From contig NC_068987.1 in the NCBI RefSeq assembly GCF_001194135.2, forward strand, positions 45,740,706-45,804,705: a DNA stretch of 64,000 nt. The letters run 5' to 3'. Position numbers and translations under genes: made by a program. Origin of the DNA: Octopus bimaculoides. Its lineage: Eukaryota. The notes below the pieces were generated by a model. The model ran no database searches. It saw nothing but the letters and a program-made list of their open reading frames with translations, and was not told the origin of the DNA. Below, piece after piece: positions 6,680-58,258 of the stretch; the first letter of the stretch is position 1, and each line of letters starts with the position of its first letter.

Positions 6680-7323
6680 TGGTAGTTTCTGAGAACATAT
6701 TTATAGGTGTGAACATATAAAAAAAATAGTCTCCCTCCTTGCATTCAGGAGTTGACACCTTGAATACAAGATTTCAAAAAGTTCCTCCATACAGAGTAAA
6801 CAAAAGACGTTTCCAACTTTATAGGTACTAGCCTATCTTACAATCTCCCACTCCACAGCAATACTTTATTCCTGTCTTTTAATTCCCAAATAAATTTACT
6901 GAGGCTGGAACAAGATGACTTCTTTCTATTATTAAAGGTATAAATGTGATTAGTGATGTGCTTTTTGATATAATTTTCTGTTGCTCCAATGTAAAAAAAA
7001 CTCTTACATTCAGACATCACTCTACATCTATATACTACATTCCTTTGCTTACAATGGTTTTTAAATAAACAGTTACTTTTAACCTTGCAATCACAATGCA
7101 TATTATCACTACTATTCATATTATTATTTTGATTTATATCTTTACATTCTGTGTAATTGTTATTTACTGTGTTACTTATGCTCTTCAGGTTGAGATGGGA
7201 TTTAATGTGGGTTGCTTCCCTTTGTACATTAGAGAAACTATGAATCCATTTATTACTAACATTTTTCCCTAGAGAATCATAATTGTTGCATTTAATTAGG
7301 TGATTATTGTTATAAAAATCCAA
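6680..7323 (-). mobile_element. Penelope-like element, GIY-YIG endonuclease region (decayed)
   Basis: ORF 6838-7323: CDCKVKSNCLFKNHCKQRNVVYRC...FYIGATEN...ITNHIYTF...SLSKFIWELKD; a frameshifted continuation gives a C-x2-C motif (CLLCMEE) and LLNARRE. Confidence 0.85.
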
Positions 7324-9164: not shown

Positions 9165-9418
9165 TGAGAGAAAGGAAGGGATGAAAAAAAAATCAGTGTT
9201 TCAACTCTGTGTGAGTATATGTGTGTATGTGTGCATGTGTACAAGGGAAGTATGGAAATGTTTGTATGTGTGATTATTATGTACCTTATTTTGTACCTTA
9301 TGTATATATAAAATTATATTGATACTGAGAACTCTTTTCTCTGATATATTATAGATATATTTTTCAGTGTGTATATGTGTAAATATATGTCTGTGTATGT
9401 ATATACATACATACACAT

Positions 9419-9449
<31 letters not shown>

Positions 9450-9456
9450 TATACCT

Positions 9457-9503
<47 letters not shown>

Positions 9504-9761
9504 TAAGTGTGTATTATGGGAACCAATTCAAAATGCATAGTTGCTGTTTTTATAAATATATCATCATCACCATCATTTTAGCATATCCTTTTCCATGTTT
9601 GCATGGGGCAGATTATCTACAGCTGGATGCCCTTCTTGTCACCAACATTCACCAGTTTACAAACAAAGGAAATATTTTCTCATGGCCAGACATGTTTTTG
9701 CAGAATATTGAAAATGAATGATACTACTCATTTACAGTAATCATGTGATGCCAAGGTAAAG

Positions 9762-10125: not shown

Positions 10126-10949
10126 ATGATGTACAGTGTGCCATATATCAGGTGCTGAAGTGTTGACAAAGTAATGTGAGATGAAGTGTTTTGCTCAAGC
10201 ACACAATGCACCACTCTGTCTTGGAACTGAAACCATGATCTTGGACTCATGACTGCAACACTCGAACCACTAGGCCATGTGCACTCTCTCTCTATATGTG
10301 TGTGTGTATGTATATATATATATACACAAACACATACATACACATACATACATACATACATACATACATACATGCATACACATGCCACCATGGTTTGGGC
10401 AGTTTGATAGGAACCAGTGTGCTTCAAGGCAGTATCATGCTCTAAGTCAGCTTTGACATGGTTTCTAGGGTTGGGTGCCCTTCCTAATACCAACCACTTT
10501 ACAATGTATACAAGCTGTTCTACAAGAGTGGAGGGAAAGTACCACACAAACAGTTGAATAAGAAGTGTGAATGGGACTAAGGAAACCTACTTTCAGTTGA
10601 GCCTGACAATGGGGTTAGATTAAGGGTTAGCTGTGTTATTGATATTAATGGTTAGCTCCAGGTCAGCCATAGTTGAGCAGACCTACGATGAAAATATTCC
10701 AACCATGACCATCCTGCTTCTTTAAAGATATCTTGATACTGTAGTTATTAGATATTAATAACTATCTAATGTGTCATTCCCCTTTTAAAATGGGGAGTAG
10801 GATTTGATTAAGATTTAGCTGCTGTTTCTAGCAGTTTGAGTAACTACATTGAAGCTCTTGTGATCTCAAGGTTAGCTGGATAGATCAGTATGTAGAAGTC
10901 TGAGCAATAAAATGAATGGGATGAAGACAAGAGAAAGTACAGGTTCCAT

Positions 10950-28948: not shown

Positions 28949-31074
28949 TACAAGGTGAACATGGATCATAATATTGAATTCACAAGTCTGAGAGAGTCTT
29001 AAAAGAACAAGGACACTACTACTGCTCTCCAGGTTAAACAACTAAAAACAATGGAGTGGAATGGTTACCCAAATGGTCAGAGTTCTAGTCTCTCCTGAAA
29101 TGAAGTGGTTAAAGGCCGCAGGTTTATGGAGTGATGTGTTGTTGAATCAACTCTAGTACTTTACTGCTTCTTATTATCTAAATCTTCCAGTTTAGAAACT
29201 TCTGAGAACATTATCACTATTGCCTAATGTCATTGTCATTGTCATAGTTGTTGATGTTGTCATTGACATCATTGTCATCGCTGCTACTTCTGCTACAGCT
29301 ATTATTTATCATCTGCATTCCATGTTGGCATGGGTTGGCCAGTTTCACAGGATCCAATGAATGAGAGGACTGCATTGAGTGCTTTGGTATGGTTTTTATG
29401 ACTGGATGCTCTTCTTAATGTCAACCACTTTACAAAATACTGGGTACTTTTTACATGCCATCAGCACAGTAGAGTCACTAAGTAACTCACATTACAGAGT
29501 TGAGGTGCAGTACCAAGGGAAGTGGCTTTGTTCGAGGTGCTTGAAAAATGTTCTTAGTTTAACGAATCCAAAAAGTGTGTTCAAAATCAGTCTGATTATA
29601 ACTTTTGGTCCCTATTCTAGAAGGAGAGTGTTTTAATAAAATGAATATGAGCAATCTTTGATTTAAGATAAGACTATCAGGATCTTTTGATGGCATACCA
29701 TGAAATAGAAACCATTGTATTATCTGTTTGCAATTCCTGTAATATGATACTGAATCAGCCTTTCCATGGAACCAAATCGAAGATCAGTATGTTTTGACTA
29801 TTCAACCATAGCACGATTTAAAGTTCAACTAGTTTAATTGTGTCTATTTAATCATGCCACAGGTCAACATTTACATTGCATAAACTTTGAGTGGCTCTAC
29901 CTGAACTGACATGATTTTCATTTCACAATTATTATATTATTCTTTACATTCTGGAGCCTAAATACATTTGAATGCAACAACAGCATTAAAAACAACCATA
30001 AGATAATAAAAATGATAAAAAAGCAATTATAAAGCTAGATATATAAATAAATAGAGAGAGGGGGAGAGGGGAGAGAGATGGAGGGAGAGGGAGAGGGAGA
30101 GGGCAGGAGAGGGTGAGAGAGGGCAGGAGAGAAAGAGAGAGAGGGGAGAGAAAGCGAGAGAAGAGAGCAGAAGAGGTAGAGAGCCAGAATAGAAAGAATA
30201 ATTCTATGAGAAATAAGTACATTTTAATCTGTATCTCTTAGAGAAGTCCCTCCATTTCCACCAGTTTTCAAGCATGAGGAATCTCTCTCACATCAATAGC
30301 AACCACTACCATTTGTATTGCAATGGTTACCATTACTTAAACTCTTAATGTGAACACCACCTTCAATATTCTTAAAAGCACACACACTCACACACAGGTG
30401 GTGACAAACACACACATATATATACAGTCACATACATATGCCAAGCTCAAGCTATATACATAATGAAAGATGACACATAATGTACACTTATGCACACACA
30501 CACACACACACACACACAAATACACACACATACATGTATATACACACATATACACACCACTAACTAGACAGAACAAACATAAAAACAAAAACACAACATC
30601 CATACTCTACATGCTCACGCATGTACACATACATATTAAGCACTAATTAGACATACAATAAATATAGCACATCAATCACAGTCAACGTGCACACACACAC
30701 ATACACACACATACACGCACACATGCACACATACACACTCTTACTATGCACAGCATACACATACCCACACAAACACAGACACACAATTCAAGCACAGACA
30801 TACACATACAAAGGCTGACAAAATATTTAATAAGGACATATTTAAAAAGACAAAAAGTGTTCATCTTTTTCAAAATCCATGTTTGTTCGTTTAATCTTTT
30901 TTCCTGGAGATTTCTTAGAAGATAAGCAACTTAATAGGAACATCTGCGCTTTTCATTTCATCACTACTTTTATAGGTTGCACTTGCTGCAGTGCATTTGC
31001 TAGCATTGCAAAAATCTTAAAAGAAACAACTTTTTGGTAGGAAAAAAAAAAGGATAATTTAGTGAGATTAATCA

Positions 31075-31403
<329 letters not shown>

Positions 31404-31404
31404 A

Positions 31405-32072
31405 ACGTGGCAAACTGGCAGAATCATTAGCACACTGGGTGAAATGTTTAGTGGTATTTCGTCTGTCTTCACGTTTTGAGTTCAAATACTGCTGAGGTCA
31501 ACTTTGCCTTTCATCCTTTCAGGATTGATAAATTAAGTCCCAGTTGTGTACCAGAGTCGATGTAATTGATTTATCCCCTCCCCCAAATTGCTGGCCTTCT
31601 ACCAAAATTTGAAAAGAGGTAGCAAGATGGCAGAATTGTTAGCACACCAGGCAAAATGCTTAATGGCATTTCGTCCGTCATTATGTTCTGAGTTCAAATT
31701 CCACCAAGATTGGCTTTGACTTTCATTCTTTTGGGGTCAATAAAAATAGTACCAGTTGAGCATCGAGGTCAATGTCATCAACTTATCCTGCCTCTGAAAT
31801 TGCTGGCCTTGTGCCAAAATTTGAAATCATCATTGTTATCATTATTATTAAGGCAGCAAGTTGGCAGAATCATTAGCACACTGGACAAAATGCTTTGCAA
31901 CATTTCTTCTAGCTTTACATTTTGAGTTCAAATTCTGCTGAGGTTGACTTTGTCTTTCATCTTTTCAGGGTAATAAAATAAGTAGCGGTCAAGCACAGCG
32001 ATCGATGTAATCAACAAGTCCTCTCCTCCCAAACGTCAGGTCTTGTGCCTATAGTAGAAAGGATTATTATTA
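31405..32072 (+). mobile_element. Three head-to-tail SINE family A copies
   Basis: Heads (CTGGCAGAAT / ATGGCAGAAT / TTGGCAGAAT) at about 31413, 31627 and 31861, each followed by B-box, core and tail. Confidence 0.85.
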
Positions 32073-39773: not shown

Positions 39774-40020
39774 CACCACCACCACCACCACCACCACCAT
39801 TTAACATCCATTTCCCCTGTTGGCATAGGTTGGACTACATACACACTCTCAAACATATGTGTATAAAATTAAATAAATGACAAGAGAACAGGAATTCCGT
39901 AATCAACTTCATTAGCTCACAGCTGTTTCTGCTACAAGATGCAAGTGCATCCAGAAGTGAGTGCCTGTGCATCTCCTTGTAGCTTCCTTAGAGCTTCTAA
40001 AATGTGGTGTGTATGCATGC

Positions 40021-40063
<43 letters not shown>

Positions 40064-40067
<4 letters not shown>

Positions 40068-53464: not shown

Positions 53465-53529
<65 letters not shown>

Positions 53530-53590: not shown

Positions 53591-53844
53591 TAAAATGACA
53601 ATTTATTTTCAAATGCATAAACGTTGATAGAACCACACAGAGTGGATAAGATATCCATACAAAGCAGAAAAATTTGTCAGCAACCAGCCATGAGACTCGA
53701 ACTCACATCCCTTTGATTACAGGTCAAGTGCTTTACCAATTAAGCTAAACTACTCACCGACAAATTAATCTACTTTGCACGGATATCTTATCCACTCTCT
53801 GCTCTTCTATCAGCACTTATGTGTTTGAAAATAAATTATCATCT

Positions 53845-53846
<2 letters not shown>
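53591..53846. repeat. Foldback element: 88-bp inverted arms enclosing a tRNA-like sequence
   Basis: 53591-53678 versus the reverse complement of 53759-53846: 72/88 identical, ungapped (hand alignment). Confidence 0.9.
53682..53754 (-). tRNA. tRNA-Thr(UGU)-like pseudogene
   Basis: D arm GCTT/AAGC with loop AATTGGTA; anticodon arm TTGA-CCTGTAA-TCAA; T arm GTGAG-TTCGAGT-CTCAT; 73 nt; weak acceptor stem and C at position 33, so unlikely to be a functional tRNA. Confidence 0.75.
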
Positions 53847-53882
<36 letters not shown>

Positions 53883-53883
53883 C

Positions 53884-53936
<53 letters not shown>

Positions 53937-53939
53937 AGA

Positions 53940-54091
53940 GTAACCACATAGATGTGAAACAAGATGCAAAAAAATAGTACTCGAATATGGATATAGAGTA
54001 AGATGCTTCATTATTAAAGCTGAAAAAACATCACAAAAATATCACAAAAAACTGCTACTCAGAGTTTCATGTTCCTATTCGTTGGACAGTT
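53940..54091 (-). mobile_element. Penelope-like terminal repeat with a minimal hammerhead-like motif at 54050-54091
   Basis: Minus strand: AACTGT-CCAACGA-ATAGGAACAT-GAAA-CTCTGAG-TA-GCAGTT; abuts (TA)n. Confidence 0.6.
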
Positions 54092-54192
54092 TAGATACAC
54101 ATATATATAGACATATATACACACATATATACACATATACACATATATATATGTATATATACATATAAATATGCGCACACACACATACACAT

Positions 54193-57020: not shown

Positions 57021-57584
57021 TAATAATAATAATAATAATAATAAAAGAAGTGAAATAAAATCAATGCAAGTGTTTCTTATTGGTATAATGGCCTTCCCAA
57101 GATACAACAAAATCTGTTTCAACACACATTTCACAACAAGAATCTTGAAAAACCAAATTCAAAAATGCATTAAAATAAGTTGTATTTAATTAATAAAATC
57201 TAAGTAGGAAAAAAAAGAAATCTTAAATATTTCAAATGATTGCCTTTAAAAAAATAATACTAAAATGAAGAGGAGAAATAAAATTTATGAAGTGGTATTT
57301 AAGTTCTATAACAATCTCCTTGATAACTATTAAGTAATTATCTTGCTCTCCAAGAACCTACTCATTCCTACTGTTAAGTATTTGAGCAATTTCAGAACTA
57401 GCTTTAATAAAGTAGTAATGTTACAAGGTTACACAGTAGAGAGAAAAAGAATCAACATAGCATGTACCTTCACTCAACTATGACTACAGCAGTGGTTTAA
57501 GAATAACAGTCAGTAGCAACAACAGCTTAATAATAATTACGCATGGATGTGTGTGTAACATGTGTTGTGGCGTGTGAGCGTGCA

Positions 57585-57618
<34 letters not shown>

Positions 57619-57748
57619 TGTGTGCGCAAATATATATGTATATGTGTGTGTGCATATGTATATGTGTGTACATGTGTGTATCTGTGTGTGTGTATATATA
57701 TACATACTCATAAACATAAATGTATGTTTATTTTGCATACGTACATAC

Positions 57749-57789
<41 letters not shown>

Positions 57790-58258
57790 NNNNNNNNNNN
57801 NNNNNNNNNNNNNNNNNNNNNNNNNNNNNNNNNNNNNNNNNNNNNNNNNNNNNNNNNNNNNNNNNNNNNNNNNNNNNNNNNNNNNNNNNNNNNNNNNNNN
57901 NNNNNNNNNNNNNNNNNNNNNNNNNNNNNNNNNNNNNNNNNNNNNNNNNNNNNNNNNNNNNNNNNNNNNNNNNNNNNNNNNNNNNNNNNNNNNNNNNNNN
58001 NNNNNNNNNNNNNNNNNNNNNNNNNNNNNNNNNNNNNNNNNNNNNNNNNNNNNNNNNNNNNNNNNNNNNNNNNNNNNNNNNNNNNNNNNNNNNNNNNNNN
58101 NNNNNNNNNNNNNNNNNNNNNNNNNNNNNNNNNNNNNNNNNNNNNNNNNNNNNNNNNNNNNNNNNNNNNNNNNNNNNNNNNNNNNNNNNNNNNNNNNNNN
58201 NNNNNNNNNNNNNNNNNNNNNNNNNNNNNNNNNNNNNNNNNNNNNNNNNNNNNNNNNN
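57790..58258. other. Assembly gap
   Basis: N run between (TA)n and (CA)n. Confidence 1.

What the first reader, a model, noticed from the sequence alone, without database searches (positions are those of the whole stretch)
53591..53846. tRNA-Thr-like cloverleaf filling the loop of an 88-bp inverted repeat, with a one-sided Pol III terminator
Seen: ungapped 88-bp arms (72/88 identical) enclose an 80-nt loop. A 73-nt minus-strand tRNA-like sequence (53754-53682) fills that loop, with only 3-4 nt spare on each side. The A box (TAGCTTAATTGG) and B-box-like motif (GTTCGAGTC) are readable. Two of the arm mismatches create TTTTT about 10 nt downstream of the tRNA 3' end, and only on that arm; the other arm has GATTAAT. 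The AATTGGTA D loop and GAC(C/T)TGTAATC anticodon arm look to me more like bacterial-type tRNA-Thr(UGU) than the eukaryotic CTTGTAAAC type. Established: Pol III uses internal A/B boxes and terminates at T runs. Inference: this could be an undescribed MITE-like family carrying its own Pol III cassette, or a structured RNA in which a long duplex extends a tRNA acceptor stem. I do not recognise it as a standard SINE, which would have a head, body and tail.
Basis: partly seen in the sequence, partly recalled or inferred. Interest (0 to 1): 0.82.

Follow-up and report, generated by a model that had tools for sequence, protein, structure and literature searches.

The report
Decayed tRNA-Thr-like gene capping a palindrome
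A worn-out threonine-tRNA-like gene in an octopus-type genome sits exactly at the tip of a 256-base hairpin-shaped inverted repeat, most likely made in one fold-back copying accident seeded by the tRNA's own stem; it is a neat but probably ordinary relic, with no evidence yet for a new mobile-element family.

Summary
The arms are 88 nt, ungapped, 72/88 identical (53591-53678 / 53759-53846). They enclose a minus-strand tRNA-Thr(UGU)-like sequence (53754-53682; Rfam tRNA 42.8 bits, ARAGORN), with readable A and B boxes and a T5 run 10 nt downstream on one arm only.

New here: the repeat is in exact register with the acceptor stem. Both have their centre at 53718.5, so the acceptor stem is the top of one ~99-bp stem.

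The tRNA is pseudogene-grade: C33, one G-G and three G-U pairs in the acceptor stem, and a cloverleaf that is not the lowest-energy fold. T-runs in both arms mean Pol III could not transcribe the long duplex.

No second copy turned up in the window, in 20.5 kb of Octopus bimaculoides, in protein space, in metagenomes or in paper texts. No convincing target-site duplication was found. The "bacterial-type" reading fails: the pattern occurs in 4 of 185,579 prokaryotic species.

Best reading (0.42): one fold-back or template-switch copy, seeded by the acceptor-stem inverted repeat, followed by neutral, CpG-driven decay. A dispersed MITE-like family (0.25) or a snap-back retro-copy (0.15) cannot be excluded, because no cephalopod genome could be searched by DNA.

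The parts
53682..53754 (-). tRNA-Thr(UGU)-like sequence, 73 nt, pseudogene-grade. Anticodon TGT is at 53721-53719. Defects: C33 instead of U33, a C27-A43 mismatch, and an acceptor stem with 3 Watson-Crick pairs, 3 G-U pairs and 1 G-G.
   Evidence: Rfam RF00005 at 42.8 bits, model positions 1-71/71. ARAGORN Thr(tgt) with drawn cloverleaf. The cloverleaf is -6.2 kcal/mol against an MFE of -12.1 for another fold.
53736..53747 (-). A box, TAGCTTAATTGG (tRNA nt 8-19).
   Evidence: Read from the sequence. It aligns to the conserved UAGCuuAaU.GG of the Rfam consensus.
53694..53702 (-). B box, GTTCGAGTC (tRNA nt 53-61).
   Evidence: Read from the sequence. It aligns to GGUUCgAaUCC of the Rfam consensus.
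53759..53846 (-). 5' arm of the palindrome on the tRNA-sense strand (the right arm on the + strand). It contains a T4 on the minus strand at 53831-53828.
   Evidence: the repeat finder I2; 72/88 match to the other arm.
53591..53678 (-). 3' arm of the palindrome on the tRNA-sense strand (the left arm on the + strand). It ends in GTCATTTTA, with the T4 at 53595-53592.
   Evidence: the repeat finder I2; alignment; T-runs read.
53755..53758 (-). 4-nt leader (GGTG). It pairs in register with T73 and the trailer (TGCT, 53682-53679), through one G-C pair and three G-U pairs.
   Evidence: The fold of the 256 nt and of the 95-nt putative transcript shows continuous pairing. The inner 11 positions hold 4 matches, 6 minus-strand G-U and 1 transversion.
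53679..53681 (-). 3-nt trailer between the discriminator base and the 3' arm. It pairs with the leader.
53668..53672 (-). T5 run, a Pol III terminator-like site that begins 10 nt after the tRNA's discriminator base. It is present on this arm only.
   Evidence: Sequence. The arm alignment shows AA in this arm against TT in the other at arm positions 79-80.

Best explanation
This is a decaying, apparently single tRNA-Thr(UGU)-derived Pol III unit at the apex of a palindrome with arms of about 99 bp.

The palindrome was most likely created in one step. The tRNA's acceptor stem is a natural 7-bp inverted repeat interrupted by 58 nt. It served as the fold-back point for a nascent DNA strand during replication or repair (an intrastrand or interstrand template switch). 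The strand then copied about 92 nt of one flank in reverse complement onto the other side of the tRNA before returning to the correct template.

Since then both arms have drifted apart to 18% divergence, partly by CpG decay, in a heavily CpG-depleted and presumably germline-methylated region. The tRNA itself has lost features needed for function.

If the unit was ever transcribed, Pol III would make an RNA of about 90-95 nt, running from a few nt upstream of the tRNA to the T5, with the acceptor helix extended to about 16 bp. The outer ~75 bp of each arm are not part of that RNA and have no function of their own.

Shown: the anatomy, the register, the decay and the lack of nearby copies. Inferred: the template-switch origin, and that the locus is single-copy.
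For: 1. Register. The centre of the arms ((53678+53759)/2 = 53718.5) equals the centre of acceptor pairing 1-72 ((53754+53683)/2 = 53718.5), with no gap. Arms and tRNA are therefore structurally coupled. This is not a tRNA dropped into an existing hairpin.
2. Precedent in papers. Short interrupted inverted repeats are the documented seeds of fold-back and template-switch junctions (PMC4689423; PMC11790251, which gives examples of 4-5-bp repeats about 48 bp apart). Template-switch mutations create whole hairpins in one event, with copied tracts up to 83 nt reported (PMC10710096, PMC8794818, PMC5453318).
3. Precedent in this window. A second inverted duplication with a unique spacer lies at 40021-40216 / 40519-40735.
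4. Arm mismatches look like neutral decay. They include a TG/CA pair typical of CpG loss. In the 88-nt arms the strand bias is not significant (8:3).
5. No further copy of arm or loop in 64 kb plus 20.5 kb of octopod DNA, although other repeat families recur many times there. No hit in protein space, in JGI metagenomes or in IMG/VR.
6. No target-site duplication.
7. The tRNA is degenerate.
Against: - Copy number was not measured genome-wide. About 85 kb of sampled octopod sequence cannot exclude a family of fewer than roughly 10^4 copies.
- A 256-bp, AT-rich, almost fully palindromic unit ending in TA/TAA has the general look of a palindromic MITE.
- The outer end of the repeat coincides with a T4 run (GTCATTTTA). 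A transcript-derived (reverse-transcribed) origin predicts this; a DNA-level switch does not.
- The copied tract (~92 nt) is at or above the upper end of template-switch events described in the papers read.
- The AA/TT double transversion that makes the T5 one-sided is not explained by simple decay.
- Mismatches in the whole 99-nt stem favour G-U pairing on the tRNA-sense strand: 14 against 3, compared with a background of 92 against 95 (Fisher p=0.010). This hints at transcription or RNA-level effects.
Confidence: 0.42

Rival explanations
1. It is one old copy of a dispersed, non-autonomous palindromic DNA element (MITE- or foldback-like) whose founder happened to carry a tRNA-derived core. 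A transposase that recognises the arm ends would move it.
For: Size (256 bp), AT-richness, nearly full-length inverted repeat and ends at TA/TAA fit the general profile of a palindromic MITE. The window carries DNA-transposon debris (a mariner HTH fragment). 18% arm divergence would fit an old family member.
Against: No second copy of the arms or the loop in the window or in 20.5 kb of O. bimaculoides, in 5.8 billion predicted proteins searched with a six-frame translation, in JGI metagenomes or IMG/VR, or in paper texts. No target-site duplication: the best candidate is 8 nt with 1 mismatch, lies inside a (TG)n tract, and is 15 nt off the repeat boundary. The arm ends match no terminal-repeat motif I recognise (from memory, not tested). 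The exact register with the acceptor stem still requires a fold-back copying step to make the founder. A Pol III cassette gives a cut-and-paste element no obvious advantage.
Confidence: 0.25
2. It is a retro-copy of a 3'-extended Pol III transcript (a tRNA-Thr-like head plus a trailer or SINE body of about 92 nt, ending at a T4 terminator). The inverted arm was made during reverse transcription. Either the first-strand cDNA snapped back on the acceptor-stem complementarity and copied itself, or LINE-type twin priming produced it.
For: On the + strand the order is antisense trailer, antisense tRNA, sense trailer. That is exactly the product expected from a snap-back cDNA. Apart from the arm-specific T5, the 3' arm ends at the first run of four or more T's downstream of the tRNA (GTCATTTTA, 53599-53591), as a Pol III transcript would. 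tRNA-Thr-like heads are the usual heads of several mollusc SINE groups, including the cuttlefish SepiaSINE2 (PMC4824008, PMC4758252). Simple-repeat tracts that could be tails flank both sides: (TA)31 at 53467-53528 and (TG)13(TA)29 at 53851-53934.
Against: It requires that the T5 at +10 arose after the event; otherwise the transcript would have stopped there. No target-site duplication. No other copy of a head-plus-body unit in about 85 kb. The right-hand (TA)29 seems to belong to a neighbouring repeat that starts with TATATA in its other copies. The coincidence with a T4 has roughly a 5% chance in AT-rich DNA (my estimate). Integration of a hairpin cDNA is inferred, not documented here.
Confidence: 0.15
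3. It is a functional structured RNA. The long duplex extending the tRNA-like acceptor stem would be kept by selection, for example as a double-stranded RNA or ADAR substrate, or as a processing signal inside a longer Pol II transcript.
For: As RNA the minus strand pairs at 90 of 99 stem positions, against 79 of 99 for the plus strand. Transition mismatches favour minus-strand G-U by 14 to 3, while other inverted repeat pairs in the same window show 92 to 95 (Fisher p=0.010).
Against: The bias comes from the inner 11 positions (6:0). These include the tRNA's own stem, and divergence there is high (7/11 against 16/88, p=0.003). That is the pattern expected from transcription-associated mutagenesis at tRNA loci (PMC6130373), not from conservation. 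In the 88-nt arms alone the bias is 8:3, not significant. Six transversions and three C-A mismatches are left uncompensated. Pol III cannot make the long duplex because both arms contain T-runs. There is no comparative evidence, since this is a single sequence.
Confidence: 0.07
4. It is a chance arrangement or an assembly artefact.
For: The window has seven N gaps and many microsatellites.
Against: The arm match has E=1.7e-20 and the fold has z=-18.8. The arms differ at 16 positions, which an artefactual fold-back read would not show. No gap lies within 1.9 kb.
Confidence: 0.03

Closest known systems
Template-switch mutations that create hairpins in one step (PMC8794818, PMC10710096, PMC5453318)
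   Same: A reverse-complement copy of adjacent sequence produces a long, initially perfect stem around a unique loop. Existing quasi-palindromes are classical seeds. Tracts up to 83 nt are reported.
   Different: Here the seed would be a tRNA acceptor stem, the loop is a tRNA body, and the tract is about 92 nt. No ancestral state is available to prove the event.
Fold-back or ODIRA-type inversion junctions seeded by short interrupted inverted repeats (PMC4689423, PMC11790251)
   Same: The junction geometry is the same: two inverted arms joined through the spacer between a short repeat pair a few tens of nt apart.
   Different: Those events give kilobase-to-megabase inverted amplifications. This one is 88-99 bp per arm, with no sign of a larger duplication.
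Palindromic MITEs / foldback elements
   Same: Short, AT-rich, nearly full-length inverted repeat with a strong hairpin potential.
   Different: No copies, no target-site duplication and no linked transposase ends were found. A tRNA in register with the repeat is not a feature I know of in MITEs (from memory).
tRNA-Thr-headed mollusc SINEs, e.g. MetaSINEs including the cuttlefish SepiaSINE2 (PMC4824008), and the Littorina, Aplysia and Crassostrea SINE heads (PMC4758252)
   Same: A tRNA-Thr-like head with A and B boxes in a mollusc genome.
   Different: A SINE has head, body and tail in one orientation, and many copies. Here an inverted arm lies upstream of the head. The Meta-domain could not be compared because its consensus is given only in figures.
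LINE-1 twin-priming inversions (from memory: Ostertag and Kazazian 2001)
   Same: A retro-copy in which the 5' part is inverted relative to the 3' part, sometimes with a duplicated segment at the junction. The loop would be the 5' end of the RNA, which here is the tRNA head.
   Different: A 92-nt duplication exactly bounded by the tRNA would be unusual. No target-site duplication or tail could be assigned.
tRNA pseudogenes and tRNA loci under transcription-associated mutagenesis (PMC6130373)
   Same: Internal promoter, a T-run close downstream, and raised, strand-biased divergence in and next to the gene.
   Different: Ordinary tRNA genes do not have 88-bp flanks that are reverse complements of each other.

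Membership tests
Functional cytosolic tRNA-Thr(UGU) gene | Matches a tRNA covariance model or cloverleaf detector over its full length | tested here: met
   RF00005 at 42.8 bits (gathering score 29), model 1-71/71; ARAGORN Thr(tgt).
Functional cytosolic tRNA-Thr(UGU) gene | Universal U33 and an intact anticodon stem | tested here: not met
   The anticodon loop is CCUGUAA, with C at position 33. Positions 27 and 43 form a C-A mismatch.
Functional cytosolic tRNA-Thr(UGU) gene | Stable acceptor stem, with the cloverleaf as the favoured fold | tested here: not met
   Acceptor stem: 3 Watson-Crick pairs, 3 G-U, 1 G-G. Cloverleaf -6.2 kcal/mol against an MFE of -12.1 for a different fold.
Pol III type-2 transcription unit | A box, B box and a downstream run of at least four T's | tested here: met
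   A box 53747-53736, B box 53702-53694, T5 53672-53668. Actual transcription could not be tested here.
MITE / foldback DNA transposon | Terminal inverted repeats | tested here: met
   88-nt arms, 82%. This is met trivially, and the ends match no superfamily motif that I recognise (from memory).
MITE / foldback DNA transposon | Target-site duplication flanking the ends | tested here: not met
   The best direct repeat is 8 nt with 1 mismatch, inside (TG)n and 15 nt off the boundary. TAA on the left against TTA on the right is part of the inverted repeat itself.
MITE / foldback DNA transposon | Multiple dispersed copies | tested here: inconclusive
   No further copy in 64 kb plus 20.5 kb of octopod DNA, nor in protein space, metagenomes or IMG/VR. 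No cephalopod genome could be searched by DNA.
tRNA-derived SINE (including MetaSINE) | Head, body and tail in one orientation, with a target-site duplication and many copies | tested here: not met
   An inverted arm precedes the head. No duplication. No other head-like sequence in the window, even at Rfam E<=1 or by blastn.
tRNA-derived SINE (including MetaSINE) | Shared central domain (the 66-bp Meta-domain) | not testable with these tools
   The consensus is given only in figures. No supplementary text is held.
Template-switch / fold-back inverted duplication | Reverse-complement copy adjacent to its source, joined at a pre-existing short inverted repeat | tested here: met
   The arms are in exact ungapped register with the 7-bp acceptor-stem repeat; both are centred at 53718.5.
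Template-switch / fold-back inverted duplication | An ancestral or outgroup state that lacks the copied arm | not testable with these tools
   No orthologous locus could be fetched. Exact-protein look-ups for neighbouring ORFs found nothing.
   The pattern TAGCTTAATTGGTAAAGCNNNNGACYTGTAATC occurs in 4 of 185,579 GTDB species genomes and in 0 IMG/VR contigs. A stricter variant has 0 hits in JGI metagenomes. Outside the searched pattern, those 4 tRNAs differ from this one in the acceptor and T stems.
Vault RNA, Y RNA and other Pol III panhandle RNAs | Match to the Rfam family model | tested here: not met
   Only RF00005 passes at this locus. The one other overlapping match at E<=1 is a far sub-threshold miRNA model hit (mir-577, 35.6 bits against a gathering score of 100).

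The most novel reading that the evidence does not exclude
Octopods carry a family of 'tRNA-capped hairpins': tRNA-Thr-derived Pol III units whose acceptor stem is extended by a duplex of about 90 bp. They would be regenerated or spread through an RNA intermediate (snap-back reverse transcription at the acceptor stem). The long arms, when read through in host transcripts, would act as double-stranded RNA or ADAR substrates. The excess of G-U-compatible mismatches on the tRNA-sense strand (14:3) would then be a footprint of editing or of selection for pairing.
Probability: 0.1. Interest if true: 0.7.

Novelty: new member of a known kind. Interest (0 to 1): 0.3.

Why it matters
If the fold-back reading is right, this locus is a clean natural example of a structured gene's own stem seeding a template switch that builds a hairpin of about 100 bp in one step. 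Template switching of this kind is the process proposed as a source of new RNA hairpins and microRNAs. That is of modest interest, and it fits known mechanisms. It would matter more only if genome-wide searches showed many such tRNA-capped hairpins in cephalopods. In that case it would be a new kind of Pol III-linked repeat in animals known for heavy RNA editing.

Tried and rejected
- Second copies in the window: blastn with word size 7, using the arms, the loop and the whole element. Only the self and inverted-self hits appeared.
- O. bimaculoides locus L001 (20.5 kb), fetched through a mariner homologue: it shares many other repeats with the window but not this element.
- Six-frame translation of the element searched against 5.8 billion predicted proteins, to catch spurious ORFs laid over other copies: nothing at E<=10.
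- Exact or degenerate arm-core patterns in JGI metagenomes and IMG/VR: 0 hits.
- tRNA-core pattern: 4 bacterial MAGs in GTDB, 0 viral, 0 metagenomic. The bacterial-origin idea is rejected.
- Sequence strings searched in paper full texts: 0 hits.
- Exact-protein look-ups for the two ORFs upstream of the hairpin, to reach orthologous contigs: not on record.
- Target-site duplication scan around both boundaries: nothing credible.
- Window-wide mutational strand asymmetry as the cause of the G-U bias: rejected, because the background is 92:95.
- MetaSINE comparison: not possible, because the consensus sequences are not held as text.
- Further sampling of octopus loci through protein look-ups: not done. 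At most about 200 kb more could be obtained, which would reveal only families of more than ~10^4 copies.
- Mitochondrial tRNA or NUMT origin: rejected because the D and T loops are canonical.

Full report
WHAT IS THERE

The window looks eukaryotic. It has 34% G+C, a CpG observed/expected ratio of 0.13-0.21 along its whole length, seven N gaps and many microsatellites. It shares several repeat families (65-88% identity) and a mariner fragment (81.7%) with a 20.5-kb Octopus bimaculoides locus that I fetched. The source is therefore an octopod or a close relative.

At the given coordinates repeat finder reports arms 53591-53678 and 53759-53846: 88 nt, 82% complementary, 80 nt apart. The ungapped alignment gives 72/88, and blastn gives E=1.7e-20.

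ARAGORN finds exactly one tRNA in the 64 kb, tRNA-Thr(tgt) at 53680-53755 on the minus strand. Rfam's tRNA model matches 53754-53682 end to end at 42.8 bits, against a gathering score of 29. Even at E<=1 there is no other tRNA-like match in the window.

The A box (53747-53736), the B box (53702-53694) and a T5 run (53672-53668) starting 10 nt after the discriminator base can all be read directly. The other arm has GATTAAT at the corresponding place. The whole 256 nt fold into one hairpin at -128.6 kcal/mol, z=-18.8.

1. The repeat and the tRNA are in exact register. The midpoint of the arms and the midpoint of the acceptor pairing (nt 1 at 53754 with nt 72 at 53683) are both 53718.5. The 4-nt leader also pairs in register with the discriminator base and the 3-nt trailer. 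The acceptor stem is therefore simply the top of one stem of about 99 bp, whose 58-nt loop is the D, anticodon and T arms. The tRNA was not dropped into an existing hairpin. The arms were built around it.

2. The tRNA is pseudogene-grade. It has C33 instead of the universal U33, a C27-A43 mismatch, and an acceptor stem of three Watson-Crick pairs, three G-U pairs and one G-G. Its cloverleaf (-6.2 kcal/mol) is less stable than an alternative fold (-12.1 kcal/mol).

3. Pol III cannot make the long duplex. It would start at the tRNA, the 3' arm has the T5, and the 5' arm has its own T4 (53831-53828). A Pol III product would be about 90-95 nt with an extended helix of about 16 bp. The outer ~75 bp of each arm would not be transcribed by Pol III.

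4. Apart from the T5, the first run of four or more T's downstream of the tRNA lies exactly at the outer end of the 3' arm (GTCATTTTA, 53599-53591).

5. Mismatches are strand-biased. Over the 99-nt stem, 14 transitions leave G-U pairs on the tRNA-sense strand, 3 leave G-U on the other strand, and 6 are transversions. Other inverted repeat pairs in the same window give 92:95:132 (chi-square p=0.003, Fisher p=0.010). The signal sits in the inner 11 positions (6:0), which are also much more diverged than the arms (7/11 against 16/88, p=0.003). The 88-nt arms alone give 8:3, which is not significant.

IS IT A FAMILY?

I could not search a cephalopod genome by DNA, so I tried every indirect route.

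- No second copy of the arm or the loop in the window or in the O. bimaculoides locus, although other repeats recur many times there.
- A six-frame translation of the element found nothing among 5.8 billion predicted proteins at E<=10.
- Arm-core patterns are absent from JGI metagenomes and IMG/VR.
- The strings appear in no paper text.
- Look-ups for neighbouring ORFs, meant to reach orthologous contigs, found nothing.
- A scan for target-site duplications found only an 8-mer with one mismatch, inside a (TG)n tract and 15 nt off the boundary. The TAA/TTA at the ends is the inverted repeat itself.

This argues against a very abundant family. It cannot exclude one with fewer than roughly 10^4 copies.

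THE 'BACTERIAL-TYPE' CLAIM

The D-arm plus anticodon-arm pattern occurs in only 4 of 185,579 GTDB species genomes: three Solirubrobacterales MAGs and one Rhodothermaceae MAG. It is absent from IMG/VR, and a stricter variant is absent from JGI metagenomes. It is not a typical bacterial combination.

The Rfam consensus itself reads UAGCuuAaU.GGUAaaGC, so the D arm is generic. tRNA-Thr-like heads are reported as the heads of several mollusc SINE groups, including one in cuttlefish (PMC4824008, PMC4758252). From memory, eukaryotic tRNA-Thr genes carry a similar GCTTA..TGGT.AAAGC D arm. I could not test this.

HOW IT MOST LIKELY AROSE

The geometry points to fold-back copying seeded by the acceptor stem, which is a natural 7-bp inverted repeat interrupted by 58 nt.

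- Short interrupted repeats of this kind are the documented seeds of template switching at replication forks (PMC4689423; PMC11790251, with examples of 4-5-bp repeats about 48 bp apart).
- Template-switch mutations are known to create whole hairpins in one event, with tracts up to 83 nt reported (PMC10710096, PMC8794818, PMC5453318).
- The same window holds a second inverted duplication with a unique spacer, inside a mariner fragment (40021-40216 / 40519-40735).

I therefore favour a single DNA-level template switch at a resident tRNA-Thr-like gene, followed by neutral decay. The arms differ by 18%, and the TG/CA pairs are typical of CpG loss in this CpG-poor region.

The raised, strand-biased divergence right next to the tRNA fits transcription-associated mutagenesis. 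This is well documented at tRNA loci, with an excess of C-to-T changes on the non-template strand (PMC6130373). It suggests the unit was once transcribed in the germline.

RIVAL EXPLANATIONS

- A palindromic MITE-like family (0.25) fits the size, the AT-richness and the ends. It lacks copies and a target-site duplication, and it still needs a fold-back step to build its founder.
- A snap-back or twin-priming retro-copy of a 3'-extended Pol III transcript (0.15) explains why the arm ends at a T4, and why the + strand reads antisense trailer, antisense tRNA, sense trailer. It requires the T5 to be secondary, and it also lacks a duplication and relatives.
- A selected structured RNA (0.07) rests only on the G-U bias, which is better explained by mutagenesis near the tRNA.
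- Chance or an assembly artefact (0.03) is excluded by the statistics and by the 16 arm differences.

VERDICT

The Pol III cassette reading is supported at the sequence level. The 'bacterial-type' reading is not supported. The claims of a 'new MITE-like family' and a 'long structured Pol III RNA' are unsupported, though the family claim is not excluded.

It is best filed as a tRNA-derived pseudogene with an acceptor-stem-seeded inverted duplication, a new example of known processes. Interest is about 0.3. It would rise sharply only if a genome-wide search showed many such tRNA-capped hairpins.

Noticed in passing
window 40021-40216 and 40519-40735 (ORF 39932-40588, minus strand): A second inverted duplication (77% over 218 nt, 302-nt unique spacer) lies inside a Mos1/mariner-type transposase fragment. 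The fragment has an HTH_48 match of 21.3 bits, below Pfam's cut-off, and 81.7% DNA identity to an O. bimaculoides copy. It has the same arm-loop-arm layout as the hairpin under study.
   Followed up: partly
whole window, compared with L001 (O. bimaculoides CM046603.1, 121929664-121950167): CpG observed/expected is 0.13-0.21 in every 8-kb block of the window but 0.96 in the 20.5-kb O. bimaculoides locus. Shared repeat copies keep CG in L001 where the window has TG or CA. The window probably lies in a long-term germline-methylated domain, such as a gene body, or comes from a different and more methylated species.
   Followed up: partly
window 53928-54092, window 14977-15074 (minus strand), L001 5318-5469: An unnamed repeat family lies just right of the hairpin. 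All three copies begin at a TATATA, so the (TA)29 at 53877-53934 is probably the expanded 5' end of this repeat and not part of the hairpin element.
   Followed up: partly
window 53467-53528 and 53851-53934: The hairpin lies between (TA)31 on the left (62 nt away) and (TG)13(TA)29 on the right (4 nt away). The two (TA)n tracts themselves register as a long inverted repeat (I4). I cannot tell whether they mark a split target microsatellite or are unrelated.
   Followed up: no
window 52082-52401: A 39-nt minisatellite (8.2 copies, 77% matches) is open in both strands. It gives ORFs of 167 aa (+) and 122 aa (-) that are almost certainly not genes.
   Followed up: no
window 9351-9514, 10273-10386, 22214-22648, 53842-53944, 57535-57791 and others: Dozens of sub-threshold Rfam microRNA matches (mir-297, mir-466, mir-3149, mir-1277) fall on (TA)n, (TG)n and related simple repeats. 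All are far below their gathering scores and are false positives.
   Followed up: yes
window 31062-31472: A trinucleotide microsatellite of about 400 bp reads as poly-Ile on one strand and poly-Asn/Asp on the other.
   Followed up: no
window 6838-7323 (minus strand): A 161-aa ORF looked GIY-YIG-like by eye. It has no supporting Pfam match; the only hit is a sub-threshold one to an unrelated domain.
   Followed up: partly
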